In this document: positions 35,141 to 63,772 of the stretch, piece by piece | How positions within the stretch are numbered: position 1 is the first letter of the stretch | How the letters are laid out: each line of letters begins with the position of its first letter | From: Podarcis filfolensis | Lineage: Eukaryota | Assembly: GCA_964270895.1 (NCBI GenBank) | Contig: OZ185435.1 | Length of the DNA: 64,000 bases | Reading direction: 5' to 3' (one strand) | The notes under the pieces: model-generated | Told to the model about the DNA's origin: nothing | What the model saw: only the letters and a program-made list of their open reading frames with translations | Databases searched by the model: none | Program-made: the position numbers and the translations under genes

Positions 35141-35334
35141 TTAGATATCATCCTCTGTCACCAGGCAGTAGAAATCTGTCCTTGCTCCATAGTTCCGAGA
35201 TCCCAAATCAGAGATGTCAATCTCACTCCTTTGGTTTTCCCCAAGCTGTATTTCTTCCAAAGCACCAAGTGGAGGACCATCAGGGCCACTCATGGGAGGA
35301 GGTGGTGCGCCTTTGAAAATGGACCCCCTGCCAC
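35141..35334 (-). CDS. SIGIRR: SIGIRR last coding exon
   Basis: atcctacag|GT GGC AGG...ATC TAA; [28 protein letters not shown]. Confidence 0.96.
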
Positions 35335-36330
35335 CTGTAGGATGGGAAGGAGAAGGTAGCAGGGATGGCAAGGCAGAATGAGACAAGTTGAAGTGCTTTA
35401 AAATGACCAGTGCCACTATACTTTCTGCTAGTACAGTGGTACCTCGGGTTACAGACGCTTCAGGTTACAGACTCCGCTAACCCAGAAATATTACCTCGCG
35501 CTAAGAACTTTGCTTCAGGATGAGAACAGAAATCGTGCTCCGGTGGCGTGGCAGCAGCAGGAGGCCCCATTAGCTAAAGTGGTGCTTTAGGTTAAGAACA
35601 GTTTCAGGTTAAGAACGGACCTCCGGAACTAATTAAGTACTTAACCCGAGGTACCACTGTATTCACAAGAAGGACATATATACAGTTCAAGCTCATTTAA
35701 ACACCAGTTTAAGTATCATTGCTTCCCACCAACATTTCTGCGAATAGTACTTCATTGAGATTGCTATCATTCCTCAAAGAACTAGTTGCTAAGGCTAGCC
35801 GGAGAGAAGGAAGAACTATTAAACCAATTTAAGTATCAAGTTGCGTGAGATGCAGGAGATCTATAACTAGGAGACAGTACAGATTGGGGTAATGGCACAG
35901 GGAAAAGAGTTCAAATTTTTTCCCCTCAGGTCTGAGGCTCAGGGTCACTGTTCCAATCAAAGCTGGAGCCTCTGGCTACTTTTAACTAAAAGCAGAAATG
36001 TCAGGAGATCTAATTATAGACCTCCTGCATCTCACGCAGCTTGGGAGTCAGTTGGCAGTTTTAAACTTAATTTAAATGTTTTATTTTAGAGCATGCCTTG
36101 ACATGTCAGACAAGAGTAAGGGGCCTGAATATTTCAACACCTAGGGAATCTGGAGGAGGCTTCAGTCCCGCCTTTTGCCAATCCCCAGGGTCTGAGAGGA
36201 GCTGCTCTTCCCCTTAGCGCTGACAGGCAGCATTTCAAAGACCTCAGGAGGGGAGCTGGGAAGAGAAACCAGCAACACCTTTGTAAGCCTCATGAAATAC
36301 ATTTAATGTGCATCACTTTCTCTCAAGCAG

Positions 36331-36374
<44 letters not shown>

Positions 36375-37403
36375 AAAAATCAGGCGCTCCTAGTGAGAAT
36401 GAAATGTCTTCCAAGCAACTATTCCCTTTGCAAGTGAGAGAATGAGGAGCCTCAAGCATCCTGGCATGCTGTTGTATGGAGCAACTAGACTAATGAGGAA
36501 AGCTTCCAACAAGGTGCACAGCCGCGCCACACAAGAAACAAGGCCTATTAATGACAGTGAACGCAACACCCTCAGCAAAATAAGCCCAACGCTGCTGTCT
36601 CAACTAAAAGAAAAGCCCAGCCAAACCCATTATTTTCTCTGTTCTTCTCTTGACAATAAAATCACCGTGTACAAGCGAGCTGGGCTTGCTCTTGCCAGTC
36701 GCTCGTAAATCTTTTATGACCACTGAACTTATTTTGCTCCTGTTACTAAAATTAAAATGTATTGCTTTGCAAGTGCTCAGCCTGTGTTAACAAATCCCTA
36801 GGGCCAGAGCTTGTTCTTCACAACCTCTGGAACCGATGCCTCAGGTGCGCTTCCTACTCATTGATCCATTGTACAGCCATAGTCCCACAGGCCTAGGAAA
36901 AAGGATGTCAGGACTAAACCACCAAGCTCAGGCTCAGAGAATGGAAAACTGCCCTTTGGTGGATATAAAACCCATTTCTTTTATGAACTCTTGGGTATGT
37001 TTGCACATAAATGATAGATGGAGGTGGTAAATTACGTAAATTTCCACTCCTTGGTATTGCTACTCTAAGGAAGCATGTAGCAATAATGACACCATTATTT
37101 CCTTTCTTCCTCTACAAACACACAAATGGATTCATAGCCAAAATAACATGTTCTCTATGAAAACATGTTGCCCTGCTCCCTATCCAATGTTAGCAGTGAA
37201 TGGGAAAAACAGATGAATTAATTATTCTGCTACACAATGTGCCACAGTATGTATGTGTGGACTGCTGCATGACAGGGAAGATAATTTCATTTGGATTGAG
37301 GCAATGGTTGTTTGACTGATGAAGGATCAGCTAATTAGGTGTAACTCTGGAATGGCCATTGAAAGGAAGGAAGGAAGGAAGGAAGGAAGGAAGGAAGGAA
37401 GGA

Positions 37404-37443
<40 letters not shown>

Positions 37444-40400
37444 GGAAGACCTGTTATGCCATTTGGAAGCCACAGACACAGCATACAATGGTGACCAAGC
37501 CTGGTGATCAACCAAAGTAGACACATTCTGCCAAGTCAGATGGTATATAAAGGCCTTAAATAAATACTACTGCTTGTGATCTGACTACACTACACAGGCT
37601 TAAAGTAGAGAAAATAAATTTTAAGGAATCTGAAAGTGGGTGCAGAGGCTTCACTTCCATTGGTCTCCACTGTCACCTCTGGCTGAACAGGTTTTGATAA
37701 TTCTGAAATAAAGAAGAAACCTATTTCCTAGAGGTGAAACTAAGATGAGAATACATAGCACAATTTGATCACATATTCCAAAGCATCTTTAATTCGGGGA
37801 GGGGGGAGCGGTCACCATCTGACTAGCCTTAGCTTTTGTAATCAAAAGTGAGGCCTGATCCTACACATCTCCACTCGAAAGGAAGCTCCCTTGAGTTCAA
37901 TGGAACTTATGTTAAAGTAAGTGTACATAGGGTTTTTGGCATACCATACTAAAATAGCTGTAATAATACAGGCAGGAAGCACACAGTTAGCTCATGGCAG
38001 TGTGTAGAAAGGCACCTGGCTGATTGATTAATAAAGCTGCTGGGCTATACTTTTGCTAATTTTAGCAAGTGCAGTGTTCTTCTATCAAGTGATTTTTTAA
38101 TGGGTTTTTTTCTTTCAAACTTAATTGTGAGCCTCACTTGAGAATCTTTCTGGCTAACTGTGGACTAACACTCAAAAAAACAAAAAACCTCAGAGCAGGA
38201 TCAAAAGCAACTGTGTGTCTCCTGTTGGCATGCTATGGTGGCAGAGTGAAGATTAAACAGTGCTGTTACCAGAGTCTCCTTCAGGGTGCGAATCCCCCCG
38301 GAAATCCAAGTAATTGCTGTTGAGGATCAGCATAGGGTCCTTGTCTTCGTGGAAACTGGTCTGGGGGTCTCCCCTGAGGCCTTGATAGGACACTTTTCGC
38401 GGCAGGGCGAGGCACAGTTCCTTCCAAAAATCAGATGAAGGCGCCTAGAAGCAGCAAAGAGGCAGCATCTTGTCACATGCTCATCAGTTACACACAAACC
38501 CTTGTGCGATATATCTGTAGGCAAGTCCCAGCAGCCCTGCCTTGAGGGCAGCGTTCTCACAGGCGCTCCTCGTCTATGAAGCACAGGCACCCTGTCTGGC
38601 TCCCAAAGGATTGAACAGAGGGAGATAAATGTTCGCTACAACAGAGGGATCTACAGCTCCACCAACAGTTTTCCCATTCAGCTTTGTTTCATCTTCGAGA
38701 TGAAACGCACTGCAAAATCTAAGAGGTATTAAGTGGCATTACTTCTGATGGAAGGCTTTCGTGACCAGATAAAGCAACAGATTTCGCCTTTCCATTAACC
38801 TAGGATTTCAGTGCAATTTTAAATTGAGTGAATTCTTTTTTCCCCTTTTTTTAAAGTAAGGCTTTTGGCTTTGTCCTCATGGATAAAAGGCATAAGAACA
38901 TGTGGCTGGTATCCAGCGAAAACTCAGAAACAGACTGCAATGCTTCAATGCCTTGCACAGATAGTTTTCCCAAGCTTGCTATTTCCTAACTTCATCTCAC
39001 CTTAGTGGCCCAGTCTGTACATCACAGTAAAGCATAGCTGCAAGCTACAGCTGCAAGCTACAGCTGCATGCAGTAAGCCAGGTTTCCTCAAACTCGGCCC
39101 TCCAGGTGTTTTTGAGACTACAATTCCTATCATCCCTGACCACTGGTCCTGCTAGCTAGGGATCATGGGAGTTGTAGGCCAAAAACATCTGGGGGGCTGA
39201 GTTTGAGGAAGCCTGCAGTAGGCCATAGCCCTAGAGGAGGAAGTGACCTATAGAGGTTACGAGAATTTGAGACAGATACTGGGAGCTGCCTGCACCCTTG
39301 AGGTAAAGGGGCATAGCTGACAGGGACCTCCAGCAATGCTTTACAGCCTTTTCAAGCACAAGAAACCACAATATTTCTACGTAATCCATTCTACTTCCTT
39401 GTTGCTACTTCAGCCTAACTGATCTGATAGTGTGCTTCTCTGGGGAACAGCAAGGTGGGTAGATATACAAATTAAACAGAGAATTCTTTTTATTGACCAT
39501 TGGCCACATCAAGTCAAAATGTACAGCTACACAGGACCAACACTGTAAATAAAACAGCAGGAATTCAAAAACGAAAACATCATTAAACAAAAAACATTGG
39601 CAGGAAATTAACAGCCACCTGCAGTCCTATTGCAGAAGCATCCACAAACTTTTAACAGCATTTGGCCACAGCTAAGGAAAAGCTGGCCACTGTGTTGATA
39701 ATACCCTTTTTTGAATTTGCCAGTAAAAAATAAATTATTTGAAAGCCTGATCAATGGCAACATTCCCCCAAAAACTGATGAAAATATTACAAGCTTTCTC
39801 AGAAATTGAGCATCCAGTAAGTAATGGGTTATATCTTTCACAGAACGTTCTCCACATAAGCAGATTTGGGAAGCAAAAGAAATATTTTTGCATCTCCCAT
39901 GACATGAAGTTGCATACACTGCATTGTGAGCGCAGGGAAAGTCTTATGCTGGTGAAATTTGATAGATCCATCAGATACAATTCAGTATGTTTATATTTAA
40001 ACTTAACTGCCATGGTGTGATTTTAGAGTTGGAAACAAAATGGAGGTATTTCTGAATAAAGAGGTCACAAACACTATTCTTTAAATCAAGTTTTGCAACC
40101 GTACAATTCCTGCTGGAAAACTATTCAACGAAAAAAAATTTTTTGTTACAAAGTACAGTATCAGAGTTGAATAAACTATCCCCTGACTATTAATTACAAC
40201 AACCTATTGGTTATATTGATTCAAAAGAATTGCAGGAGTTAATTCCAATAGTTAAAGCAGGCTAGCATTCACTTTTATTTTTAGAGCTAAAATGGCCCAT
40301 TTTTTATTGGAGAAATGCTGTTAGCATATTTGATGGTGTTCTGAACCCAATCAAGTTGGATGAGAAGCAGACACACACACCCTGAACCCCAAGATCTCAA

Positions 40401-43400
40401 ATGCAAAGAGCAACTGCATAGTTAATTTGAACCCATTTTAGAATCGGCAATAGGCATGCCAATATTTCGAGGTACTATTCAGCTGTCATTCAGCTTTTAG
40501 TTTTATGGAATTTCAGGGGAACTGTGAACCACCAGAGATGGACTATACAGAGCTCTTTCGCCATGTGTGCCTGTTTCCAGCAGGGCAGCAGGTATGTACA
40601 GCCAAACAGAGCACTATCAAACCCCCTGCTCATCAGCTGGTGAGTGGAGAGCAGAGTATAATCTTCCTGGCTGAAGGGGTTTGCTTTGCCAGAATGAAGA
40701 CTGGCTTGTGGGCCAGAGGTTGCCCACTCCTGCTGTATAACCTCCTTGCAAACCAATCAGGATGAACAATCTGGAATCCACCCTAAATACAGGAATATAG
40801 TTGGACACAGTCCACTTATGAGATAATTTAGCTTAGTTTTTAAGGATAATGCTCCTACCAAATTAACACATGGCAAGCAATGCTGGTGTTCAAGGTTCTC
40901 CAAGAATGTATTTCTACTGATGTAATCAAAGGCAGTTTTAAAATCAACAAAAACTGCAAAGAGCTTATTTTTTCTGTTAACACAGGAATTAAATGAGCAA
41001 GCACAGAATGGTTGTCCAGCATTAACCAGCCAGCTTTAAAGTCAGCTTGTTATTCTGCAATTACATTGTGCAACATCGGCCATTCTTCATTTTCAAAACA
41101 GGAGGTATTTTACATGTAATTTTTAATGCTATCTATAAGACTGATTGGTATATAATTTGTGTGTCGCCTTTCTTGAAAACTGGGATCACTGTGCTCAGAT
41201 TCCACCCTGATGGAATACAGCCAATTGGGGTTTTTTGAACCAAATGATTTAGCAATGACAGGACCACTCCACTGGATGTTACTTTAAAACCTCTCTTGAT
41301 ATTAATTCCTCTCCTAATGCCTTATTTTGGAGTCAGATTTTTAATCTGACTAAGAAACAAGAAGCCAAAGATGGCACCTCAAGACTGGCAGCCTGTTGCT
41401 CATGTACAGCAACAGTCTTATTAAAAATGTTAATGTGCTGTTCCCATTTTGTCTTAGAGATAGGAGTAAACAAAAAAATAGCGGACATATGGTGGCTTTG
41501 ATCCACTCACTGCCAGAAGGAAGCAGTATCCTTACACCTAATGGCATTTTCCAGGCACTGTTAAAGCTGCTTTGAAATATTTTGGCTGTCGTAACCTCTT
41601 ATTAGCTGGGGAGGGGAGTAGGTAGTTCCTTGAAAGCTGTGTCTAAAAGGCCTGTTTAACAAAGCTGCTTAGGATTCTTTACATTGTAAGTAAAATCAAA
41701 AAGCCCCTTTCTTATGTCTTGAGGCATAGGTTGTGTGCACAGCAGAGTGTTAATTGCACAAGTGAGTTGCACAGCTCTGATTTTTCCATGTGGATTTTTG
41801 TGCACATCTGTCCACAGAACCACCTTCAAATGAACTCTATTGCAGTGCTTCCTGTCCCCCAAGAGTGGGAGGTGCTTGATGGGATGATGTCTTTGCACTG
41901 TGTGCTGTTGTCCCCTCCCCTCCATTCCTCGCACTCCCTAAGTTCTGGAAACCTAAGGTCTATTGCAAGCATGCTTGCAGTTATTTGTTTACCTTTGTGT
42001 GCATCCTATTTATGTATTTAAATATTTATATGAGGTACAAGTTTTGCATTATACCAGACTTACAAAAAACAATGGGTCCAGTTCTTTAAAAATACACACA
42101 CATGTGTCATGTCACTAGTTTTTCTAATTGTTGTAACCTGCCCTGGGACCGTGAGGTGAAGGGTGGGTGAAAAACCTAATAAAATAACTAAATATCCTGA
42201 TGTGCAACTGCAAGGAGTATTGTGAGTCACAAGCATGCTATTGTTCATTTAGCACAGATAAAGAAACAGCAATAACTGTAAACCAGAAGTCTCTATCCTG
42301 CTAGAATGCTCCCCTGCAAATGCTCATTTTAGGGAAGGGTTTGTGCTTTTTTCCTTCTCCAGTCTCTAACTTCCCCCTCTTTTTTCATTTCTCTTTGCAC
42401 TGAGAGTACTCTGGGTGAAGCAAGTAATTGTTTCCAATTCTTATTTCTCAGGTTCTGGTGCCTCCCTGTGGCTCTGTTTGCTTCTTCAAAGTGGGAGTTA
42501 AAATATAACTTATCTATATTTTCTGCAATGCTTACAACACTGCTCATGGCCTCCACGCATGAGCCATGGAGCAGTCAAGCCATGTTCATCTAAAAAGGTA
42601 TCATTTGGCAAATATCTGGAGCCGATGATTTCCTAGTCAACAGGTAAATAGCTAAAATAAAAAGTAAATAACAGGAGATATCAAAATAATGGACAAACAA
42701 AAATATATTCAGCCTACTTTCATGAAGGTGCTACTCTTTAGTGCCAAGAAAAGCAAGTAACAGTTATTACTCTGGTATACATCACAGCAAGGTCAAGTAA
42801 TGGAGGACTGGATCTCAACCCTTCGTGGAAGAGAAGCTACTCTACACTTCTATGCTTCTTGAATAGCTTCAAGTACTGCCTTGCCACTGAGAAACATAAC
42901 CACAGTGATGAAGTTATGGCCTTGCAGCCCACAACTTACCATGGACCCAGCGCGCCACATCAGAAGGGTCACTGTACTCTTCTGCTGCTTCAGCAAGTTT
43001 ATGGCTGGATGTGCTATTTCTCGGTACTGGCTCTCAAAGACAATGAAGATTGGCCTCCGGGAGAGTTCCAGCAGCCTCCAAAGACCTTCCCTGCAAAACG
43101 AGACAATTGGTTAGAGTCCTAAGCAAATCCACAACCAAACTATTGAAAAAGCTTTGAACCCAATCTAGTCACCCAAAATTTTAATTCTAAGCACGACTAG
43201 TTTCAGTTCAATGAAAACTTCAGGAACTGGTTTCAGAGGCATTAACACTAAACTGCCGTGCTTCATATCCAGATATATGAGAGAGATTCTGGGTGTTGTG
43301 ATTGGAGGAGTTTACAGAAATTGGATAAATTCAGAGGCCCTTCTAACCATAGATAGGAGAGCCAGGAACATACTCCCTCCTGCCTTCCTACTCCCTTCTA

Positions 43401-46400
43401 CCTTCCCTCCTACTCTTATAAGTACAACTTATTGGAACACTTGACTGGTTTGACAAGCCATAGTTTACCAGGACAACCAAATAAGCAAACTGTGATTTTA
43501 GTGATCCCTCCAAATCAGAATTGCACATACTATTTGCCTGTTTGGTCAACTTGGTAAACTTTCTATTAAACAAGGTGGGCAATAGGAGGGAGTACACACT
43601 TGAGTCATTCCTGATCCTCCAAAAATGAAAGGAGGATCAGAGAACTTGTCTCTATTGCTGACTCTCTAATTACCTGAAATTATTGTTGCACCATTCCTGT
43701 TCCAGATATGCATTAGAGAGAACCACAATGAGGCGGCGGCACCGGCTGACATTCATAATCAGATCTGCAGAAGGTTCTGAAAGAGAGGAGAAAAACTAAA
43801 TCTCTTCTGAGAAGGGCCAGAACCAATCCATTGTTGTTTCAGCATTCATCCTTCACCTGTACAAGAAAGAAATACCCTAGCATCCAAATGCATATCCGCT
43901 CTGCTCTGCAGAAAGGAGAACCCCTGGGCAATGGAATAAAAACTAACCAGCCTGTTTAGAACTTCCCTGTCCTTCAGACAGCACCATTGGTTTTGGATAT
44001 GAGTGCCTCTGGTGGAACACTCAGGACATTAAAAAAAATAAATGAAGAGTATACACACCACAAAGAGCACAATACAGATGCTGTTTCCATAGTACTATAC
44101 AATCAAAAAGGTAATACAACTGCTGAGAAATGCTGTTTTGTGGTGTATTCTTGTTTAACCAGCACTGTCCACTGTGGGCAGCATTATAGAATATGGAGGA
44201 GCTGCATTTTGTACACAGCTTGTTAGCATCCCCATGCAAATGAATGCTGCACACTTTTTATAGAAGTTTTATTAAACAAAACAGTTGAAGATAAGAACAA
44301 ATGGTCTGAAGGCACATGATTACAGTGATATTGCTGAAGCCAGAACAGTGGTGGCCCTGTAAACTGCCTGGATAGGAACTACACTTCATGCTCTTTGGAG
44401 GAAGATTAAACAAGCTGTACCCAAAATAAAGAAACAACACATTGGCAAACATATGCAATAACAGCCTGGAAACGTGGAGGCACAGGGAGATGCAGCGGGC
44501 CAGCACAAAACAACCACCCATCTCTTTGAAATGCATATCTGCAAGGTCATGCAAGTTAAGCAATGCATCATGCCACAGACTTTGAACAGGTGTAGAAAGC
44601 CCACCAGTTGTGCTGAGCATATACTGGGCAAACTGTGAATACATCCTACTTAATATGCAAATGGAACCTAACTGTGGACAACTGGGTGGTTAAGGAGAAT
44701 ACATTTTTCTTCGTACAACAGAGAGCCTGTCTATAAAATATTCAGTTCCTACTTTGCACAGCTTTGCCATTATTGGTGTTTAGAATTAAAGGTATTTTAG
44801 GTTGCTTCAGATGCACAAAATAGTGTGCCAAAGGACAAAGTAATTTTTCAGAGCCATACTTTTAAGTAGCAAAGTGCAGCGTTCAACAGGCTTCATTTCA
44901 GATACAGTGGTACCTCGGGTTAAGCACTTAATTCGTTCTGGAGGTCCATTCTTAACCTGAAACTGTTCTTAACCTGAATCACCACTTTAGCTAATGGGGC
45001 CTCCTGCTGCTGCTGTGCGATTTCTGTTCTCATCCTGAAGCAAAGTTCTTAACCCAAGGTACTATTTCTGGGTTAGCGGAGTCTGTAACCTGAAGCATAT
45101 GTAACCTGAAGCGTATGTAACCCGAGGTACCACTGTACTGCATTGCAATGTTTGTGGCCCTTTCCTTCACTCTGAAAAAGGATACAGATGTCAAGCTGGG
45201 ATCATATATGAAATGCACAATGCTGTCCTGAATGTACACACCAGCCTGTATTCTAATATCTCAGTCAGATATAGCACTGCACTATGTTTTACATCTTTCC
45301 AATCTACCTTGGAAACAGGGATATGGATTAAGCTGTACTTGAAATGCAGAATGTTCAGGGCAACTTTCAGGGAAAGTTGCATACCAACTTTCATCCTGCT
45401 GTCTCAGTGTCTAATAGAAATAGTGTTTCTTGCATTCTCCTCTTGTTTGAAAATGGTTGCAAGAGTTAACCTGATATTCAGCCTTAGTGTGTGTACCAAT
45501 TTCAATTGGATATTTTAACACTTAATAAAGCTACCATATTAAACATAGGATGCCAAATGGGCAAATTAAACTGAAGGTTTCTCTTCATTTAGCCAACTAA
45601 TCCATTTCAGGTAAGTTATTTGCAGCCTGAACTCAACAGCAAGTCTGAGTGCCCAGGTACATATTAAATGAGGTGTTGGACAAGGTTCTATACCTGAATT
45701 GGGCAGGATGTCTTTATCATCCAGGAAAATCTTGTAGCCATGACGATTCTCCAGCTGTGGCTTCACTATGAAGTTGACAAACTTTCTATCATCCGTTGAG
45801 TTAGAATAAGACACATAGGCATCATACAGCTTTCCATCTGTGAAAAAGTACCAAGAGGAGAAATTTATTATAATTTTTTAAAAACAACAACAACAAAACC
45901 TGTGCTGACTAGCTATAACACTGAGAGGATAATTCTTGTAGAAGTTCACACTTTGGGTTGAACTGTTATTGAAACTCGAATCTCACAAGGGGAAAGGTGA
46001 CAGCCAACTCTCCAGCCCAATATTTACCATTGATCTCCACCTCTCCATGACGGTTTCTGTACCAGAGGAGCACATTCAGACGACACTTCACATACATCAC
46101 AGCCATTAGTAACAGCAGTGCCACAGTGACAAGTGCAGCTAGCACTGCGCCCAAGTGCCCAGCAGTCTCTGCTGTAATAGAAAGACATATTTTAAATAGC
46201 ATTAAATGAGAAAACAGCCTTACAATTGATAGCATGGTAGAGAAAAGAGGAAGAGAAGAGTTGGGGTCTATGGTTTCAGAATATACCAAATTATAAAGAA
46301 AATGAGGGGTTACGTCATTCTTGAACAATTTTTAGTATCTTGATGACTGTTCTGACTATCAGAACGTGCAACCATGATGAGGAAGAGATGAGCAGAAGCT

Positions 46401-48038: not shown

Positions 48039-48079
<41 letters not shown>

Positions 48080-51000
48080 CACTTCAAAGGCATCAGCCAA
48101 TCAATGCTGTACACAGCCATATTCTTATCTGTTGGTTTTCAGAGGTCACTTCTGAAAGGGAAATTTACATTTGGATTGAATGCCATAAGTGTGTTTTCAG
48201 AGTAGTCTGTCAACTCTTAAAAAAAAAAGTATCTCCAACTCTCATTTCAGAAATACTCATGGGAATTCTACTATGGAATACAGTTAGTGAGTAGCAGAAT
48301 TTTTTTGAACTTAATAAAGATAACAACCTTCAAATAGAGTACCGGCCCACACCCAAATGCACATGGTATGAAGTACAAAGAAATGCTACCTGATTTTTGC
48401 AGTGTGAAAACTGCTGTACTGTTTCTAACCCAGCAGGCAAATGCTCCATAATTTTCATCTGTTGTTACATTCATATCCAAAGTGCTGGAGATGAATATCT
48501 CTGATTTATTGTCATTGAACCTGGGGTGCAAATAGAAGATGATTTACGTTAGCACTGATTGAAAACAAACACTAGGAAATTTCAGTCAGAACCGGACAGG
48601 AAGGAAACTCAGAGGGCTCCACCCTATCAATCTCGGATTATACCAAACATTAAATTTGGACAAGGAATGAACTGTGAGTTGGTAACAAGAGTGTCCATTT
48701 GAGTATCTATGATCTGGAAATACTGTCACTATTTTATCACGTTGGCCTTTGAAAACCTTTTCTTCCACAAAAACTAGTAGACATTTGGGGGGGGGCGCTA
48801 GGGGCGCATTGGAAGATGGCCGACAATAACATCTCTCCGTCTCACACGAGGTAATTAAGAGGCTGATATGGGAGTATGCAGCCTCCCTTGTTACCCCAAG
48901 GGAACGGGGAACACTGCCTCGCCTGCGGTTGCCATAAATCACCCCCGGATTCAAAAGAAGGGGGTGAGGGCACTAGGCGCACAGCCCTCGTGTGGGACGG
49001 CTCTCCCGGACGCTGTCTCTGATTGCGCGGCCTGGTTGCAGGAGCTCATAATAAACAATTAGAGAGAAGCAAATGCACATATTTTGAGTGAAGATCGGGA
49101 GTAAAAACTGCTAACTGAAGTTACCTCTGTGAAGTGGAGCAACGGGCTGGATTTAACAATATATCAAGAAGAAGATACATCAAAGGGTCGGTATGTCGGA
49201 ACGGGACTGAAAGGGGGGGGACTTTTCTTTTTTTATCTTATGTGAGTACCTAATAACCCCCCCCCAAGAAGAATCGTTGCAATTACTGATTACAAGCAGG
49301 ATGATTAAGAACTGTGTGGAAATAAATTACTAATCAAAGGCATGGTTTGTGGAATGTCTGGAAAGGAATGAAAGGTCTTTGTGACACAGTTATAAAAAGA
49401 GACTTGTTAGGGCAGGCCTGGCTACAGGATTTATGATCGAGGGGGAGGAGACCATGGCTTGTTATTATATCGGACTGTGAGTTTGACCTGGCAGAACCCC
49501 CTAAGAGACTGACAGGCATGTGAGGATTAATGGACAGACTTTAAGAATGTTTTGTACGGAAGTGCGGAAATAGTGTCTGTCTGTTTGAATATGGCTCTTG
49601 GAGGAATGAAAATCCACACAGGATATAACAACGTTTGTTTTCAACCCGCTTGTGGAGACTATCAGAGGTCACAAAGAAAGGAATATATGACAACAACAAG
49701 AAGATGAGGAAAATAATAAAGAGAAGATTGAACAGAACTGTGAATACTGTTTGGACAGAACTGTGAACATTAAAGCAGCAGCAAGAGAGATGTTTGGATC
49801 CCTTTCAGAGCTCAAAGCATGGGTACCCCCAACAAAAATTTAAAAATTTGGCTGTGTAATTTGGAATTAATGTGATTTGATTGGTTTGTTAATAAAAATT
49901 ATATTTAAAAAAAAACTAGTAGAAATTTGGGGACTTTCAAAATCATCTTTTTCCTTGTTCTTTTAAAGCAATGGATTAATTGTGGTTGCTTAGTTGTTGT
50001 ATGGGATCCCATTGTCTTACATAAAAGTACTTATTTTGTGGAACTATAGTAGCAATGTCCTACTGCTTAAAGTGCATTTTTTTCTTACTAGTGAAATGTC
50101 AATTTTTCTTCTCCCAGCTACAGCCTCCATGCCATTATTGAGTGATGCACAAAATATTACATGAGTTCACAGTAACCTAGTAGAACATATCTATGACCCC
50201 ACTGATAACGTACAACACAACACAAGTCCCCTGCAGTGGGAACACTAAAATAAAGGGGGTGTTCATGAAACCAGATTTGGTCTGAAGCCACAAACATCTG
50301 AAAGGGTCTTCTTCCTCTCCCTCTCCCTCTGCCTCCCCATTGAAGACTGATACATAGAGCATTCTCTTAAACTCTTCTCCAGGGCTTAAGTGTACAATTT
50401 TCTTTTAAACAGAAACACAATCTCCCACTCTCACTCAATCTCACCCTACTACAGCAAAGATATTTCCTCCCATTGAAGTATATATATTACACTACTGCCC
50501 CTATTCCACAAACCTATAAGGCTAATAGTATACATAAGCCCTTAAAGATCCACCATTATCTTCAGAGTCTGGGAGACACTATTTTAATTTGTTTCTAGTT
50601 TATACAGCCAATTTAGCTTTATTTTCCATTATACATAAAAGCCTTCTTACCAATGAGTAGAAGCAGCATAGGTCTCGTTGTCTAGCAACTGGTCATCTTT
50701 CATCCAGTGGAGGCCAAAATCACAGCTTTTCGTGTAGGGCAGCTGCACAGTGCAGTTCAGTGTAAACTGGCTTCCCAAATCACGTTGCAAAGTCAGATTG
50801 CTGGAGGGGTAAAGGAAACGAGGAAGGACACTGCAAATATCTGTTGGGGAAACAAAAACAGTACACCGTAAGAGAGCTTTTCAATGAGAGCACTGAACTT
50901 CCAGACTGCATACTGCAAATCTTATACTGGCTATTTAGGTCTGGCTAACATAACAAAGAAAGTCAAGCTACTCTTGTCCCTGTGACCCTGCACCTAAGCA

Positions 51001-54000
51001 CAATCTCCCTTGCACAGTGGGTTCACTGATGATTCCTGCCTCCATTCACCATGTTTAGGAAATGTAACTAGACAAATTGCTGTGTATAACCTCTCTTTCA
51101 AGGCTGGTTCTGCAGTTCTGATTTGACTTGAGAAAACAATGAGAAATTCAGTAAGGACTATAGTAGGAAAGACAGAATATTCAGGTTATCTGGAAAGCAT
51201 GTCATGTCCCATAATAGAGAAATGCCCAGGATAAAGGGGTATGCACATCACAGAAGTGCTGAATATGAGATATGGTATTAATTATTAACTTTTGAAGTCC
51301 TAGTGCCAGTACTTTAATTATTCTCACTGCCTGTTCAGAGTCCAGCACAGTGCTGTTCTTCCCCCTCTATCTTTCATACTGTCAACTCATTCATCCATGC
51401 TAAATATTTTCAGCATATGTGACACATTTTCAGCATATGTGAGCGTGTGTTTTTTTAATGAAGAACTTTCTGAATCCTATTGTGGAAAATAGGGAGTTTA
51501 AGGTGCAAATGTCACATTGCATTAAAAACTAGAATATGTCACAGGTACTTATCCCCAATTTTCCATTCCCTTACATTCCCTTAAATTCTGAAAAGGAGAA
51601 CTAGGCCATCATGGCCATCATTTTTTAAAATGTAAAGGCTCTCCCTTCTGTAGGTACTGCTGTGTGTATTGGACTCATTTCCAAACTTTACCTTTATTTA
51701 AAAGGGAGAACAATACAAAAAATATTGTTTTTAGTGCCCATATCCAGTCCTTAGCCAATTCAGGAGAACTTCCTGAGAAACCAGCAACTACCATCCTTAT
51801 CTTAATGAATAAAAAAAAATTGAAATCCTATACAAATCTTCTCAGAAATAAGACCTACAGTGCCTAGCAAGCCTGACTTCCAGGTCTCAGGATGTGTGTG
51901 CAGGATTTCAGCTCAAATGATGTATGATCTCCCTCTGACCATCTTTAGCTAATTTATGTTTCTAATAGCATAATGAAGTGTTCCAAAATGGTGATCCATC
52001 CTAGTTTAAGTGCACTATAAAAGATTAAGCAGAGACAAAAACACACTTATCTGTCCCAACAAGTCTGCTAATTTTTTAAATCTCAGCATATATATTTTTT
52101 TAAACCTGTCTTTTCCCATTTCAACTCTGACAATACAACTAGCAAATAGGGGACGGAGTGAGCTTATCTTGGTAGCTTCAGGTACCTCTCACCACATTTT
52201 AGGTACTATCACTTGTTATCACAGCTTTAGAAACATTAAGTCTTTTCTCTCTCTCCTAAATTGTCTCTCTACCACAGTGAAGCCTTCGTCAGGTTTATCT
52301 GTTTACACAGTTCTATCAGCCAGTAAAGTGAGATGAGCGCCGAAACCCCTGAGTCGTCCGTGACAGTCAGGGGTCCCTTTACCTTTATATGTCATCTTAA
52401 ATATAACATAAAATGCAGAGAGGGCTCAGAAAGAGCTACGTGTCTGCCATTTTCTCCCAGGCAAAAGGAAGCCCTCTTCAGCAACAGCCACACATACAGT
52501 CACAGACATCAGCCCGCCAACTTCTGGTTGACAATGCATAATTTGGATCATAGCACTTGATAAATTGGCTCACATCCCCAGGGCTTATCTAGTGCCATAA
52601 CTTATTTGAGTATGATCAGTACCTTATGTTTAGGTGAAAGGGGACAAAATCATGCCCTACATAGTTAGATACTTCACAGCTGCTCTGTGTCTAATGAGCA
52701 ACATAGGAGCCAGACTTAGGCAGACAAGTGGCCCATCTTGAAACAGTGGCAGTCCTGCTTCTCCTGGGATGGGCCCAAGAGGAGACATCAGTGTTAGGTT
52801 TGGGATCCAAAGGCATGTTTGTGAATTCCCACTTCTTTCACTCACCTGCCATGACCAGCCGGACAGTGAAGGAGCTGTTTCTCTGATCGTTCAAGTAGAG
52901 CGTGCAGGTATAGTTGCCTGCATCGCTGGCATTGGCGTGCTCAAAGGTGAGGTATGTTGTTGTGTTCTGCAGTGTGCTGTGCAGGTGGCTTAACGCAGTG
53001 AAGTTAAGCAGATGACAGTTTTTGCTCCACTGGATGCTAAAGTTTGAGGTAGACTGAAGAAGCTGGAGGCTCTGGTTATCCAAAGGGCAGAACAAATGAT
53101 TAACCTGTTCTTGCTGGGTCCAAATGGTGTGATCATAGAAGTGATCTGGGTCCACACACGATAAATTAGATGAAACCGTCAGCGAAAAGAATTCTAAATA
53201 AAGCAAAGCAGTTAAATTGCAACTACTTCTGTGATGCCTAATCCAACCTACATTTCTACAGCAAGCACAGAATATGCAACTCCAACAGCAACCAAGTCAT
53301 TCATGCCCAACCAGGTCATAGACACTGCCCCCCTGGCTGAACTTACTTTTAATATGCATACCATGTGATGGCTCCTGAAAGACTGTTTACAGTGAATTTA
53401 CTATAGAGAAGAGAGATAAATATTTATCATCCTGATAACAAGATCAGCTAACTATGTGATTCTAACTAGAACTCTATCTATGCCATAGATTCCTTATTTA
53501 TAATGAACAGAGAACAAATTGATAATAAGGTAACTAACACAATGATCACATTCTACAACCCTCCTCATAACACACACACCACACAAAAAATGCTAGGAGA
53601 GGCAATGCACTGAAGCAAGCACTATAGAAAAAGAAAAGAACAGGGGGGAAACCTAGCCAACCAAATACTGCTAATGTATAAAAAAAGCATTGGTGATATT
53701 CACTGGTCATTTGCACACCTGGAAACTTTTTTAAAAAAGATACTATAATTATAATAAGTGCTTCAGAGCTACAAATTCAAAGGAAAAGCAATCAACCTTC
53801 AAAAAAACCTGTACAACACAGTACATTTTGCTGAGCAAAAAGTTGCATGTCTGTATACTTGTTAGTATTTGATATGAACTGGAACTGGAACAATGAAGTA
53901 TATGAAATGGATGCACTTGTTTGTCCATGACAGTGAACCTCCACCTTATTTGATACCACTGAGAAATAGATAGAGGTTCTGTATCTTTTCCAGTGCTCAG

Positions 54001-60000: not shown

Positions 60001-62796
60001 ACCAAGGCAATATTGTATCTTTTATCCTCTTGGGCAACATGTATAAAGATTTCTGCACTACTCATCATGGCTACTCAGAGGGAATTTAAGAGACAAATCA
60101 TATTTCAGAAGAAGAAAAATGCCTCTAAGAAACATCAAAATGTTGCACCCCACATCATCTTATGTTGCTGTTCCAATTAGGCAAGCATAAATTGCCTAAG
60201 GGTGCCTCCAGACAGTCACTATTTTGCAAGTGGGATTCAAGAGCACATCAGAAACTTAGGTCTGAGCCGTTAAATTGGATTGAAAGGCTCTGTTGCACTA
60301 GCTCAACAAATCCACTTTAAAAAAGAATCAGGCTTTCTGCGGTTTGGAAAGTCATGGGGAAACACACTGGAAGTATGGGATAAATGAATGAATAACAGAA
60401 GGGGGTATTATTATTATTATTATGCTGTGTATTTTGTGTTTTTATGTTGTAAGCTGGCCTATTGTCTTTGAATGAAGAGTAGTATATAAATTTTAAAAAT
60501 AATAGTAAACTAGGTCTGTTGGCAGACTGTGTTACAAAGATGTCTGCAAGTGTGATATGAAGGCTGGCAACATTAACCCCACCATGTGGGAACCCTTCGC
60601 AGGCAATCACAGTGTCTGGAGACAGTCAATCAGTAACGAGAGGAATGACCACTGGTATGAGCAAAGAGAGAAGAAACACCATGGTGTAACTTTAGCAGCA
60701 AAACCAGATGCCTTCTTCTGCTCCACCTGCAAGAAAACATACGTCTCCTGTATATGTCTCTGGAACCACTGTAACTCTCCAACAGCTTGACTTCACTCCA
60801 AAAGGCACACTCGTCTATTGTCTCCCAAGAAAGACGGATACCAACACAACCCTATTCAAGCATACGACTTAAGAGATGCAGGTTGTGTCCCCATTGTCAA
60901 TCGATGGAAATGGAAATGTTAGCATCCTTACATTTGTAGTAGGGTGTGTTATGAAAGAGTACTTCATCTCTGTACTAACAAAGCTATTTTACCAATACAT
61001 AGGGATAGCAAGTTAAATCTAGAAGGAGTACAGTAGAGTTTCTTCATCGTGCACTGCCTGATCATTTTGTGAGCCACATCAAAAATAAATCATAAGGAAG
61101 TAAAAATCTTGTATGCAGATATCTGTGACACTCCAGAGATAAATCTGCTCACTTCCTAGAACGACAGTTCAACTATTTATTTATATGGTCATTTGAAAGC
61201 ACTAATTATGGGAATAAATGTGTCAGTTCCATGTATGGCTAACCTAGTGTTTCATTGCCCCACCACATACTAAATTTAACCCCATAGTATCCAGCTGTGG
61301 CACAAACATCACAGTGGCAAAGGCAGAATGAGTCTATGGCACTTCTGGACTAGAAGCTGAGGATTTATAGGCCCGACTAAGGCAAAATCTGGTTGGATGG
61401 TGTTCTTGAAGCTACCAGCATGAGTTTGATCAAACTGCGGGAGGCAGTGGAAGACAGAAGTGCCTGGCGTGCTCTGGTCCATGGAGTCACGAAGAGTCGG
61501 ACACGACTAAACGACTAAACAACAACGACAAGGCAAAATCAAATGTATATTCTTGCCTGTCTCTTCAGCACTGCAATGACACCTACTCCTGAGATTAGAA
61601 GACTAGAGCGAAAGCCACTAGTAGCCTAACACACACAGGTTTGCACAGGTACTGTAATGCAATATAGAGTAGCACACTCACATATTTTGAAGATCCCTAC
61701 AAGTTGGCCACTACTAATTAATTTCTTTTTTAAAAACTGTATTCCACTTCCTTCTACATATGTCCAAGGCAGCCAACAGTAATGCAAATGAAAAACAGAA
61801 AACAAATAAACACCATATAGCTGGTCAGCAAATAAACTTAGGATTTGATCAGCCAATAGGATGACTATGTTGCTGTACTAAGCCACCCCTTAGAATGCAA
61901 CTGACTAGGCAGCATCCTGTGTTCCCAGAGAAGAATAGCCCATTTTTTTCTCCCAAGTTCCTGTATGCTTTGCCACTGGCTGCAGGGTCAGCATGGGCAG
62001 AGGCCAGAGTAAGACTGGATTGTATAGGTCAGAAGAACAGTGGATGCACTTTTCATTCTCTCCTAAAGCTCCATGCACCCCTACAGCAAATGTTAAGCAG
62101 AAGGCAAAGAGAATGATGGATAGACAAATGTTGACTACTGAAAAGCCCTCACAGGACAGAAGCCAGCCATATCAAGCATCAGTGAGCTAATGTGAAGCCT
62201 ACAGGAACCTGGCAATGTGTGTCATGGGAGAATGGAATTCAATGAGGCCTCAAGAACAAATGGAAAACATAGGACACCCCTATGATCAGATAGCAATACA
62301 AACGCACGCACACAAATCTCACTGACCAAAAAACAACAATGGAAAACTAATCTCAAATTGGGAAGCAAGGCCTAGGAAAGGCCACTGTGCCAAACAGAAA
62401 CAACAATGGAAATAGGCCTGCCATGTAAGAAGCTTCAAATCTTCTCTCAAATTACTCATATTGTCTCATAAATAAAGTGTGTCTCTTCCAAAAAGAGATA
62501 TCCAAACACAGAAGAGCGATTAGTGGTTGAAGCACAAGTGACTGCAAAGGCAGAAGGCCTGATCAGGTCAAGCAAGAAGGGCACAGAGAAGAAAAAAGAG
62601 TGGGTCAGACTGCCTTAATTGCTAAGCACCACAAACCTACATATATTCATAAAAGACACAGACCAACACCAGGAAAACTTTTTCTTTTCGTCTCACCTTG
62701 TAAAGCTGCTGTCCTTTCCTGCTCACTCCTTGTGGCAAGGCAGAAAGCCAAGAGCACAGATGGCACAGGCAGAAGAGAGAGCAATTTCACAGTCAT
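35141..62796 (-). CDS. SIGIRR: SIGIRR/IL1R8 orthologue with signal peptide and two Ig domains (DIGIRR-like), 559 aa: complement(join(35141..35334,38270..38444,42940..43090,43674..43776,45694..45837,46028..46171,48390..48520,50651..50840,52846..53193,62697..62796))
   Basis: Ten GT-AG exons totalling 1680 nt in one open frame. Has the TM-proximal [15 protein letters not shown] motifs ([35 protein letters not shown]) and the tail [28 protein letters not shown]. Syntenic with PKP3. The eight 3' exons are secure; joining of the two 5' exons is inferred. Confidence 0.88.
35434..35659. mobile_element. Tc1/mariner-type MITE, copy 1
   Basis: TIR cagtggtacctcgggtta/taacccgaggtaccactg; TA TSD on both sides. 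Confidence 0.92.
36333..36370. repeat. (GT)n microsatellite
   Basis: Read directly. Confidence 0.95.
37361..37442. repeat. Compound tetranucleotide (GGAA)n(GAAA)n polypurine tract
   Basis: Read directly. Confidence 0.97.
38270..38444 (-). CDS. SIGIRR: SIGIRR TIR box 3 and start of tail
   Basis: cttctag|GCG CCT TCA...TCT G|gtaaca; [41 protein letters not shown]. Confidence 0.96.
39079..39215. mobile_element. hAT-derived MITE (family of 8460..8595)
   Basis: TIR caggtttcctcaaactc/gagtttgaggaagcctg; TSD cagtaagc/cagtaggc (7 of 8 match). Confidence 0.88.
39640..39960 (-). mobile_element. Probable non-LTR retrotransposon ORF2 C-terminal zinc-knuckle remnant
   Basis: Translation [17 protein letters not shown] resembles the CxCG...H.L..C motif at LINE ORF2 ends. 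Confidence 0.4.
42940..43090 (-). CDS. SIGIRR: SIGIRR TIR exon
   Basis: ttttgcag|G GAA GGT...TCC ATG|gtaagt; [50 protein letters not shown]. Confidence 0.96.
43674..43776 (-). CDS. SIGIRR: SIGIRR TIR exon
   Basis: ctctttcag|AA CCT TCT...TTC AG|gtaatt; [34 protein letters not shown]. Confidence 0.96.
44905..45135. mobile_element. Tc1/mariner-type MITE, copy 2 (inverted relative to copy 1)
   Basis: Same TIRs and TA TSD; interior is the reverse complement of copy 1. Confidence 0.92.
45694..45837 (-). CDS. SIGIRR: SIGIRR TIR exon (box 1)
   Basis: ttttcacag|AT GGA AAG...TCA G|gtatag; [47 protein letters not shown]. Confidence 0.96.
46028..46171 (-). CDS. SIGIRR: SIGIRR transmembrane exon
   Basis: ctattacag|CA GAG...AAT G|gtaaat; [43 protein letters not shown]. 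Confidence 0.96.
48040..48078. repeat. (TG)n microsatellite
   Basis: Read directly. Confidence 0.95.
48390..48520 (-). CDS. SIGIRR: SIGIRR membrane-proximal Ig domain, second half
   Basis: caccccag|G TTC AAT...TCA G|gtagca; [38 protein letters not shown]. Confidence 0.93.
48791..49910 (+). mobile_element. Non-autonomous L1-type retroelement, about 1.1 kb, with 5' end, poly(A) and TSD
   Basis: G-run start, AAGATGGCCGA motif, CpG-rich 5' part, AATAAA at 49891..49896, A tail, and flanking duplication aaaaactagtaga(c/a)atttgggg (48769..48790 and 49911..49932). Confidence 0.8.
50651..50840 (-). CDS. SIGIRR: SIGIRR membrane-proximal Ig domain, first half
   Basis: ccccaacag|AT ATT TGC...CAT TG|gtaag; [31 protein letters not shown]...WMKDD. 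Confidence 0.93.
52329..52386 (+). mobile_element. 5'-truncated Sauria SINE tail
   Basis: gagatgagcgcc...caggggtccctttaccttt, like the 3' end of the copy at 54516. Confidence 0.7.
52846..53193 (-). CDS. SIGIRR: SIGIRR extra N-terminal Ig-domain exon
   Basis: ctttatttag|AA TTC...ATG GCA G|gtgagt; open phase 1-1 exon with LFCP...IQWSKNC...LTF...DAGNYTC Ig motifs and 8 N-glycosylation sequons. Confidence 0.88.
54516..54902 (+). mobile_element. Full-length Sauria SINE
   Basis: gggaacaggtggcgctgtggtctaaaccac head, (accttt)-type tail, perfect 13-bp TSD taaatatgcaact (54503..54515 and 54903..54915). Confidence 0.92.
55996..56292 (+). mobile_element. RTE-clade LINE 3' end
   Basis: Frameshifted [20 protein letters not shown]...EKRAKRK...QCPHCG...SRIGLDSHL, the RTE ORF C-terminus. 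Confidence 0.8.
56989..57214. mobile_element. Tc1/mariner-type MITE, copy 3 (same orientation as copy 2)
   Basis: Same TIRs and TA TSD; interior near-identical to copy 2. Confidence 0.92.
57856..58108. mobile_element. Complete hAT MITE
   Basis: TIR caggggtaggcaaact/agtttgctgactcctg; imperfect TSD (actctact/actctaac). Confidence 0.88.
60570..60850 (+). mobile_element. RTE-clade LINE 3' end, different subfamily
   Basis: [18 protein letters not shown]...FFCSTCKK matches the RTE ORF C-terminus pattern. Confidence 0.7.
61390..61529 (+). mobile_element. 5'-truncated BovB (RTE) LINE
   Basis: cctggcgtgctctggtccatggagtcacgaagagtcggacacgactaaacgactaaacaacaac BovB end; 11-bp TSD aaggcaaaatc (61379..61389 and 61530..61540). 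Confidence 0.92.
62697..62796 (-). CDS. SIGIRR: SIGIRR putative first coding exon, signal peptide (whole exon 62697..62820)
   Basis: Acceptor ttttccattttgtag|, in-frame TAA 9 nt before the ATG (A at -3), [33 protein letters not shown], donor CAAG|gtgaga in phase 1 matching the next exon. Confidence 0.75.
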
Positions 62797-63772
62797 TTTA
62801 GCTTATTCACAAGCAGCATCCTACAAAATGGAAAAGCACAGGGGAAATAATTACCTTTATGGACTTCCCTCTTTGAGATTCAGGCAGCCACCTTCAAATC
62901 CTGAGACTCCTTGTGTGTCCTTGCTGTGCACTCCCTGATCGTAGCCATGTTAATCACATGACTGGCCAACAGACTGGCTTTGCCAGTTAAGTATCTCCCT
63001 CTGCTTTTTTTTTTTGTTGTTCATTCCATGTCCTCCTTAAATGACTTGTTCTATTCTCCACCCCCAATCACAATCTTCCAGGCTTGCACTCGGGACAGCC
63101 AGTTCCTCCCACCTGCTATCATTGCTCCACCCACCTTTCCACCTGCATACAAGGAGAAAATGAAACCTGGACTCTTAAAATCAACAAACCCACCCAGCGT
63201 GTTGGCAGCAAAACAGCCGACCAAGAGTTTGCTCAGTAAAGAGCCAGGAGGCAGGTTGCTCAAAAGCTCTGCAGCTGTGAGGATTGCCGCTCTGTGGCAC
63301 TAAGCCAGCCGGTTATCCTGGATCCTGGCAAAGAATGCTGTGGACTATAAACAAGAAAATGCCCCAAGGAGTAAACAAGAACCCCCCTAAGGAGTAAACA
63401 AGGAAAATACACCAAGGAGGCCTGCTTTCATGCAAAGGGAAAATGTTAGATCTCAAGACAAGACCAAACCTGACAGCTACACCATGTGTGTAAGTTCTGT
63501 TACTGAACTGAAAAACAATACTAGTAGAGCTGAATTCTCTTTTTTAATCTGTAAAAGATGTGCTGCTGTTTTCTTTTTAAATGTAGCATAAAATACATAC
63601 TCAGGGCTACTCATAATTCTGATCATGAAGTGCAGCTGATATACAGTTCAGTTGTGAAAGAAAATGCATAAAAAGGAACAACTCTCCAATTACAGAGAAG
63701 CTTTCAGAAACCTAAACATGAAACATGGAATAACCACACTAGGCTCCCCAAAGTTGTATTCAGAATCATTAC

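What the first reader, a model, noticed from the sequence alone, without database searches (positions are those of the whole stretch)
52846..52852. Extra Ig exon ends at the position of the mammalian start codon
Seen: the exon ends GTC ATG GCA G|gt, giving [11 protein letters not shown], and this is its only in-frame Met. From memory: human SIGIRR begins M-P-G-V-C-D-R-A-P-D-F, with only ATG CCA G at the end of an otherwise untranslated exon. Inference: the mammalian 5' UTR exon may be the decayed first Ig exon, and the signal-less single-Ig protein arose by starting at this internal Met. The lizard gene could make both forms.
Basis: partly seen in the sequence, partly recalled or inferred. Interest (0 to 1): 0.82.

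Follow-up and report, generated by a model that had tools for sequence, protein, structure and literature searches.

The report
Ancestral start codon of single-Ig SIGIRR
This wall lizard's SIGIRR gene (an immune brake) still has a second immunoglobulin exon, and the Met-Ala codons that end it are the codons with which the shorter, signal-peptide-less SIGIRR of mammals, birds, turtles, frogs and advanced snakes begins, so that odd protein arose by losing this exon's coding capacity and starting at an old internal methionine.

Summary
On the minus strand, a 348-nt phase-1/phase-1 Ig exon (53193..52846) of a Podarcis SIGIRR gene ends GTC ATG GCA G|gt. That Met is the exon's only Met.

The exon encodes the first Ig domain (like IL-1R domain 2) of a 559-aa receptor with a signal peptide. 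This "DIGIRR-type" form also exists in shark, sturgeon, salamanders, crocodilians and most squamates. The Met is kept from sturgeon to lizards.

Single-Ig SIGIRR models of placentals, birds, turtles, frogs, advanced snakes and bichir begin at exactly this Met; a few gene models differ. Genomic DNA of elephant, wood mouse, ostrich and spadefoot toad shows the same ATG GCN G|gt exon end. Mouse mRNAs show that the rest of that exon is untranslated.

No similarity to the Ig exon survives in those four species. Two turtles and a garter snake are intermediates. Each keeps a recognisable Ig pseudo-exon with stops or frameshifts that still ends ATG GAA/GCG G|gt. Turtle mRNAs carry it as a 5' leader ahead of a 417-aa ORF starting at that Met. 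At least five independent losses follow.

That the lizard makes both forms rests only on predicted isoforms. Loss of Ig domains is a published idea; the start-codon mechanism was not found in the literature searched.

The parts
62697..62796 (-). Coding part of exon 1: ATG (62796-62794) plus signal peptide, ending CAA G|gt (phase 1).
   Evidence: Identical to residues 1-33 of the RefSeq Podarcis/Lacerta models. The homologous exon1-to-Ig1 junction is seen spliced in turtle mRNA contigs.
52846..53193 (-). Ig1 exon ('extra' Ig, homologous to IL-1R domain 2): 348 nt, phase 1 at both ends, open reading frame with four conserved Cys.
   Evidence: Ig_2, 29.7 bits. 53% identical to sturgeon DIGIRR. 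Conserved motifs LFCPLD and GNYTCTL. Collinear with D2 of IL1RAPL1, IL-1RAcP and IL-1R1.
52846..52852 (-). The finding itself: ATG GCA G at the exon end. It is an internal Met148-Ala149 of the 559-aa form and would be the start codon of a 412-aa single-Ig form. Context gtcATGG (G at -3, G at +4).
   Evidence: Same 7-nt-plus-donor structure in 8 other species.
52844..52845 (-). GT donor of the phase-1 intron after the Ig1 exon.
50651..50840 (-). First exon of the membrane-proximal Ig (homologous to the single mammalian Ig, D3-like). It begins AT ATT TGC (D-I-C with the carried G).
48390..48520 (-). Second exon of the membrane-proximal Ig.
46028..46171 (-). Transmembrane exon.
42940..45837 (-). 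Three TIR-domain exons (45837..45694, 43776..43674, 43090..42940).
35141..38444 (-). Two C-terminal tail exons (38444..38270 and 35334..35141, including the stop). The whole 10-exon model gives 559 aa, 557/559 identical to Podarcis raffonei SIGIRR isoform X1.

Best explanation
The window holds the SIGIRR (IL-1R8/TIR8) orthologue of a Podarcis wall lizard in its ancestral two-Ig, signal-peptide-bearing ('DIGIRR-type') form.

The 348-nt exon is the first Ig domain, homologous to domain 2 of IL-1 receptors. Its penultimate codon is a Met at the end of the last beta-strand, just before the linker to the second Ig.

This Met is old: it is present from sturgeon to tetrapods. It is the codon that serves as the start codon wherever the first Ig domain has been lost. 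In those lineages the signal-peptide ATG and/or the Ig1 reading frame decayed. The exon stayed in the transcript as a 5' untranslated exon. Translation then begins at the surviving ATG GCN G at its 3' end. The result is a signal-less protein with one Ig domain, inserted by its transmembrane segment (type III topology, from established knowledge of mammalian SIGIRR).

Shown here: homology of the Met, of the exon end and of the intron phase; intact long forms in lizards, Python, crocodilians, salamanders, sturgeon and shark; decayed Ig1 exons in two turtles and a garter snake; a turtle mRNA of the predicted structure.

Inferred: that the mammalian, avian and anuran ATG-bearing exon is the same exon after complete sequence decay; that the loss happened at least five times independently (placental mammals, birds, turtles, caenophidian snakes, anurans).

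Not shown: that the lizard itself uses the internal Met to make a short form alongside the long one.
For: Gene model: 10 exons, 559 aa, 557/559 identical to P. raffonei SIGIRR X1.

Ig1 exon: it is 53% identical to sturgeon DIGIRR P0005, whose 90% cluster includes 'DIGIRR [Acipenser sinensis]'. Two-Ig SIGIRR models exist in newts, crocodilians, many squamates and a sawshark.

Met: nearly invariant in alignment A1. Single-Ig proteins start at it.

Shared exon end ATG GCN G|gt:
- elephant L001
- ostrich L003 and Emydura L002
- Chelonia L004
- Apodemus L011 with mouse mRNAs mapped on it: an exon of about 165 nt, no upstream ATG, in-frame stop 7 codons upstream
- Thamnophis L012
- gharial L015
- Spea L016

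Intermediates:
- Emydura Ig1 has one stop, a Cys-to-Tyr change and a frameshift. Chelonia has two different stops and a 7-aa deletion.
- Thamnophis has two frameshifts and a stop.
- Turtle mRNA contigs L013/L014 map as exon 1 + Ig1 pseudo-exon + normal exons. Their 417/418-aa ORF starts at accATGG.
- The signal-peptide ATG is GTG in all three turtles where gharial has ATG.

Other support: the Kozak context (purine at -3, G at +4) is shared by all seven species with DNA. Synteny ANO9-SIGIRR-PKP3 holds in elephant, ostrich, turtle and mouse-like loci, and ANO9 lies upstream in the toad locus. A 552-aa two-Ig ORF lies on a 2.8-kb agamid-like transcript contig, so the long form is expressed in a squamate.
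Against: No sequence similarity to Ig1 or to the signal exon remains in the 10 kb upstream of the ATG in elephant, wood mouse, ostrich or toad.
- tblastn: best E 0.04, on the wrong strand.
- Profile HMM: nothing, while turtles score 65-118 bits.
- Local DNA alignment restricted to the 341 nt upstream of the ATG, not anchored at the exon end: z 0.6-1.6 against 39-103 for turtles and snake.

In those lineages the identity of the exon is therefore inferred from 7 nt, the donor, the phase and the position.

The mammalian exon is about 165 nt, not 348. No monotreme or marsupial sequence could be obtained.

The Met may be conserved purely for structural reasons. It is hydrophobic Leu or Val in shark and a teleost, and Thr in IL1RAPL1.
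Confidence: 0.85

Rival explanations
1. The Met is conserved only as a hydrophobic structural residue at the end of the last strand of Ig1. The lizard makes only the long form. The Met became a start codon secondarily, and only in lineages that had already lost Ig1, because it was the nearest in-frame ATG.
For: Shark has Leu and a teleost DIGIRR has Val at this position. IL1RAPL1 has Thr in the aligned LTVTAPL. No transcript or protein evidence for a short form in Podarcis was obtainable. The short squamate isoforms are computational models.
Against: This differs from the main explanation only on dual use in the ancestor. A strong Kozak context is kept even in species with the intact long form (gtcATGG lizard, accATGA gharial). 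Gene-model sets give short isoforms in Python, geckos, P. lilfordi, alligator and newt alongside long ones. Five or more independent losses all landed on the same codon.
Confidence: 0.45
2. The ATG-bearing exon of mammals, birds and frogs is not the old Ig1 exon. It is an unrelated 5' exon that independently acquired ATG GCN G before a phase-1 donor.
For: No residual sequence similarity upstream of the ATG in elephant, wood mouse, ostrich or toad. The exon is about 165 nt in mouse against 348 nt.
Against: The same 7 coding nucleotides, the same phase and the same following exon (D/G-x-C...FLSP) are found. The exon sits in the same position after a long first intron in a syntenic locus. Turtles and a snake show continuous intermediates with the Ig sequence still attached to the ATG. 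Independent convergence in three or more lineages is very unlikely.
Confidence: 0.04
3. The extra Ig exon is a squamate novelty or an annotation artefact (an exonised or duplicated Ig), not an ancestral part of SIGIRR.
For: The gene is named 'single Ig' everywhere, and the literature calls DIGIRR fish-specific.
Against: Orthologous exons at 47-54% amino-acid identity occur in sturgeon, sawshark, newts and crocodilians. The gharial exon is intact with the same boundaries. An agamid-like mRNA contig carries the 552-aa ORF.
Confidence: 0.01

Closest known systems
Fish DIGIRR (double Ig IL-1R-related molecule; Gu et al. 2011, cited in PMC3482685, PMC3705552, PMC9020223; sturgeon entry UAB59905.1)
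   Same: Signal peptide, two Ig domains, one TM segment, a TIR domain and a SIGIRR-like tail. It occupies the same locus as SIGIRR. The lizard Ig1 is 53% identical to sturgeon DIGIRR Ig1, and sturgeon keeps the ...SMAD..C motif.
   Different: DIGIRR is described in the literature as fish-specific and as an alternative to SIGIRR. Here the same architecture is the normal SIGIRR orthologue of lizards, crocodilians and salamanders. The one teleost DIGIRR examined lacks the Met (Val).
Mammalian SIGIRR / IL-1R8 / TIR8
   Same: Orthologue. The lizard shares the membrane-proximal Ig split over two exons, the TM segment, the TIR domain and the tail ending ...[16 protein letters not shown]. The N-terminus MAG/MPG-V-C-D-R-A-P-D-F-L-S-P aligns residue for residue with lizard [14 protein letters not shown], and the ATG GCA G|gt exon end is the same.
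   Different: Mammals have no signal peptide and no first Ig. The exon carrying the ATG is otherwise untranslated and keeps no similarity to the Ig exon.
IL-1R family ectodomains (IL1RAPL1, IL-1RAcP, IL-1R1; PDB 5wy8, 4yh6, 3o4o, 1itb)
   Same: The lizard two-Ig ectodomain aligns collinearly with domains 2 and 3 (IL1RAPL1, E 1.9e-8), including GNYTC and the D2-D3 linker.
   Different: It has no domain-1 equivalent. The position of the Met is Thr in IL1RAPL1.

Membership tests
SIGIRR / IL-1R8 orthologue | Full-length collinear identity with annotated SIGIRR proteins | tested here: met
   The 10-exon model gives 559 aa, 557/559 identical to P. raffonei SIGIRR X1. The best hits are SIGIRR of reptiles, birds and mammals.
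SIGIRR / IL-1R8 orthologue | TM segment + TIR domain + long C-terminal tail with the conserved terminal motif | tested here: met
   The exon translations carry [29 protein letters not shown] and ...[22 protein letters not shown]. Database relatives carry Pfam TIR.
SIGIRR / IL-1R8 orthologue | Conserved locus between ANO9 and PKP3 | not tested
   Seen in the elephant, ostrich, turtle and Apodemus loci, and ANO9 upstream in the toad locus. The window's own flanks were not examined.
DIGIRR-type (two-Ig) receptor | Two extracellular Ig domains | tested here: met
   Ig1 exon: Pfam Ig_2 above cutoff. Ig1 and Ig2 align to D2 and D3 of IL-1R family structures. The second Ig is homologous to the mammalian single Ig.
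DIGIRR-type (two-Ig) receptor | N-terminal signal peptide | tested here: inconclusive
   Exon 1 encodes a hydrophobic leader conserved among squamates, crocodilians and sturgeon and spliced in phase. No signal-peptide predictor was available.
DIGIRR-type (two-Ig) receptor | Sequence homology of Ig1 to a protein deposited as DIGIRR | tested here: met
   E 6e-28 and 53% identity to sturgeon P0005, whose cluster contains DIGIRR [Acipenser sinensis].
DIGIRR-type (two-Ig) receptor | Negative regulation of IL-1/LPS signalling; Golgi localisation reported for zebrafish DIGIRR | not testable with these tools
   Functional property taken from the literature.
Signal-less single-Ig (type III) SIGIRR form made from this gene | Transcript or translation product that starts at Met148 | tested here: inconclusive
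   Only model proteins are available: P. lilfordi 412 aa, Python X2 and gecko isoforms. The three upstream ATGs inside the exon are out of frame, in weak context, and end before the Met, so initiation there is feasible.

The most novel reading that the evidence does not exclude
The Met is an ancient dual-use codon. The SIGIRR gene of early bony vertebrates already produced two receptors. One was a signal-peptide-bearing two-Ig form. The other was a signal-less one-Ig form, initiated at this Met from transcripts lacking exon 1. The short form carries the indispensable function, which is why the long form could be discarded independently in at least five tetrapod lineages, each time leaving the same start codon. 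Lizards, crocodilians and salamanders would then still run both receptors.
Probability: 0.4. Interest if true: 0.7.

Novelty: new member of a known kind. Interest (0 to 1): 0.6.

Why it matters
SIGIRR/IL-1R8 is a much-studied brake on IL-1 and Toll-like receptor signalling. Its architecture is odd: one Ig domain and no signal peptide. Reviews say that little is known about its evolution.

This locus, read with its relatives, gives a concrete step-by-step account.
- The two-Ig 'DIGIRR' form is not fish-specific. It is the ancestral SIGIRR and is still intact in lizards, pythons, crocodilians and salamanders.
- The mammalian start codon is an old internal Met at the end of the lost Ig exon.
- The same truncation happened repeatedly. 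Turtles and snakes preserve the half-decayed stage.

It also raises a testable question. What does the extra ligand-facing domain do in species that keep it? Do those species run two receptor forms from one gene?

Tried and rejected
Residual similarity of the mammalian, avian and anuran ATG exon to the Ig exon was tested in three ways, all negative while turtles and snake were strongly positive:
- tblastn with five two-Ig N-termini
- a profile HMM of 12 Ig1 domains against six-frame translations of 10 kb upstream
- local DNA alignment of the 341 nt upstream of the ATG against dinucleotide shuffles

No monotreme or marsupial protein id could be obtained within the three capped protein searches. 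A length-window trick brought in placentals, frogs and caecilians only. A paper's remark on a platypus Ig domain could not be resolved from its supplements.

The Microcaecilia model was not on record. Gu et al. 2011 (the DIGIRR paper) is not held in the library, so whether it mentions the Met could not be checked. The 13 held papers that mention DIGIRR were all listed and six of them read. The three main evolution papers among the 12 holding 'SIGIRR' and 'reptil' were also read. None of those read mentions it.

Structure prediction was considered. It was not run because the PDB alignment already places the Met at the D2-D3 boundary.

Full report
**What is at the coordinates**

The gene lies on the minus strand. 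The exon 53193..52846 has the acceptor tttatttag|AATTC and ends GTC ATG GCA G|gtgagt. It is 348 nt and phase 1 at both ends. Its translation holds one Met, the penultimate residue. Joined to the next exon (50840..50651), the protein reads ...[22 protein letters not shown].... The exon passes the Pfam Ig_2 threshold. The window has no N.

**The gene**

A 100-nt coding first exon (62796..62697) encodes a hydrophobic leader and ends in phase 1. With eight further exons it gives a 559-aa protein that is 557/559 identical to Podarcis raffonei 'single Ig IL-1-related receptor isoform X1'. A 412-aa Podarcis lilfordi entry begins [11 protein letters not shown], exactly at the Met of the finding.

**The extra Ig is ancestral**

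An exhaustive profile-free search with the exon alone found one full-length family: sturgeon/paddlefish proteins (53% identity). One of these is deposited as 'DIGIRR [Acipenser sinensis]'.

A search with the sturgeon Ig1 region returned two-Ig 'SIGIRR' models from newts, gharial and nine squamates. Later calls added all crocodilians, Pleurodeles, geckos, iguanians, Candoia and a sawshark. A 552-aa two-Ig ORF sits on a 2.8-kb agamid-like transcript contig, so the long form is expressed. The gharial exon is intact with the same boundaries and ends ACC ATG ATA G|gt.

Against solved structures, the two Ig domains align collinearly with domains 2 and 3 of IL1RAPL1, IL-1RAcP and IL-1R1. The Met falls at the end of the last strand of domain 2, just before the linker.

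**The Met**

In the alignment of 13 two-Ig proteins the Met is present in every sequence that covers the position. A sawshark has Leu and one teleost DIGIRR has Val.

Most annotated single-Ig SIGIRR proteins start at this residue, and only a few gene models differ:
- squamate short isoforms and caenophidian snakes: MADLCS
- turtles: MEDLCS or MADLCS
- birds: MADLCS or MAEFCS
- frogs: MADAAC or MAGSAC
- caecilians and axolotl: MAANSC or MAADSC
- bichir: MSTVDC
- placentals: MAGVCD or MADVC
- primates: MPGVCD

**Exon structure in single-Ig lineages**

| Species (locus) | Exon end |
|---|---|
| Elephant (L001) | ATG GCA G\|gtaggc |
| Ostrich (L003) | ATG GCA G\|gtaaga |
| Wood mouse (L011) | ATG GCA G\|gtaggc |
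| Spadefoot toad (L016) | ATG GCT G\|gtgaga |

Mouse mRNA contigs mapped on the wood-mouse locus show three things:
- the ATG exon is about 165 nt;
- it is preceded by alternative non-coding first exons 1.6-5.7 kb upstream;
- it is followed by the exon that begins GT GTC TGT.

In those mRNAs an in-frame stop lies 7 codons before the ATG, and there is no other ATG in the exon. The recalled mammalian structure is therefore correct, as checked on non-human mammals.

**Residual similarity**

None was found in elephant, wood mouse, ostrich or toad, by tblastn, by profile HMM or by local DNA alignment of the 341 nt upstream of the ATG. Complete decay is expected, however, after hundreds of millions of years of neutral drift, and other lineages supply the missing stage.

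**Intermediates**

- Emydura (L002): an Ig1 exon is still recognisable (65 + 45 bits in two frames). It carries a stop, a Cys-to-Tyr change at the canonical Ig cysteine and a frameshift. It still ends GCC ATG GAA G|gtaggg.
- Chelonia (L004): 118 bits in one frame, with two different stops and a 7-residue deletion. It ends ACC ATG GAA G|gt.
- All three turtles: the signal-peptide start codon is GTG where gharial has ATG. This is a shared lesion.
- Turtle mRNA: two emydid-like contigs (L013, L014) map on the Chelonia locus as exon 1, Ig1 pseudo-exon, then the normal exons. Their leader holds 12 short upstream ORFs. The 417/418-aa SIGIRR ORF begins at accATGG, the conserved Met.
- Garter snake (L012): an Ig1 pseudo-exon with two frameshifts and a stop, ending ATG GCG G|gtgagt. 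Python and Candoia keep an intact long form.

**Number of losses**

Crocodilians keep the domain, while birds and turtles do not. Python keeps it, while the garter snake does not. Salamanders keep it, while frogs do not. Placentals lack it. That makes at least five independent losses in tetrapods, all falling back on the same codon. Paddlefish and an electric ray also have models that skip the symmetric Ig1 exon and join the signal peptide directly to the second Ig. This is a second route to a one-Ig form, and amniotes did not take it.

**Could the lizard make both forms?**

The Met has a strong context (G at -3, G at +4). The three other ATGs in the exon are out of frame, in weaker context, and open ORFs of 10-48 codons that end before the Met. 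A transcript starting in intron 1 could therefore yield the 412-aa protein. Short isoform models exist for P. lilfordi, Python, geckos, alligator and a newt. An Ensembl P. muralis model starts just upstream of the Ig1 acceptor. None of this is direct evidence.

**Literature**

Reviews describe DIGIRR as a teleost or fish-specific molecule at the SIGIRR locus. They repeat the hypothesis that SIGIRR arose by loss of Ig domains, and they note that mammalian SIGIRR lacks a signal peptide. Broad evolutionary surveys of the IL-1R family do not mention two-Ig SIGIRR in reptiles or amphibians, or the origin of the start codon. The original DIGIRR paper could not be read.

**Verdict**

The idea of domain loss is known, and the two-Ig gene models are already in RefSeq under the name 'single Ig'. 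What appears new is the mechanism (an old internal Met at the exon end becomes the start), the half-decayed turtle and snake stages, and the repeated independent losses.

Noticed in passing
L002:~3427, L004:~1314, L013:266, versus L015:3011: The start codon of the signal-peptide exon is GTG in a pleurodire turtle, a cryptodire turtle and an emydid-like transcript, where gharial has ATG. This shared lesion suggests the long form was already disabled in stem turtles.
   Followed up: partly
L013:1-690: The turtle SIGIRR mRNA leader carries 12 upstream ATGs with ORFs of 2-49 codons before the main accATGG. How efficiently the main ORF is translated is unclear.
   Followed up: partly
window 53173-53193 (minus): Lacertids use an acceptor about 18-21 nt upstream of the one implied in other squamates, adding 'EFFSLTV' at the start of Ig1. 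RefSeq X3/X2 isoforms of Lacerta and Zootoca lack it, and Zootoca X3 uses a third acceptor further in.
   Followed up: no
window 62793-62819 (minus): An 8-codon upstream ORF (ATG at 62819) ends in a TGA that overlaps the signal-peptide ATG (ATGA).
   Followed up: no
P0106 (paddlefish), P0314 (electric ray): Isoform models join the signal-peptide exon directly to the second Ig exon, skipping the symmetric Ig1 exon. This gives a one-Ig receptor that keeps a signal peptide.
   Followed up: no
L002:5440-5553 (minus strand): Weak tblastn/HMM match to Ig1 residues about 52-89 (E about 0.01) in the first intron of Emydura. It may be a small inverted fragment or chance.
   Followed up: no
window 53231-53239 (minus): An Ensembl P. 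muralis model and a Logan contig (P0343, P0001) start MHHRSS just upstream of the Ig1 acceptor. In this window that codon is AGG, not ATG, so the extension is not available here.
   Followed up: partly
window 47990-48050: A (CA)n microsatellite lies in the intron between the second Ig exon pair and the TM exon.
   Followed up: no
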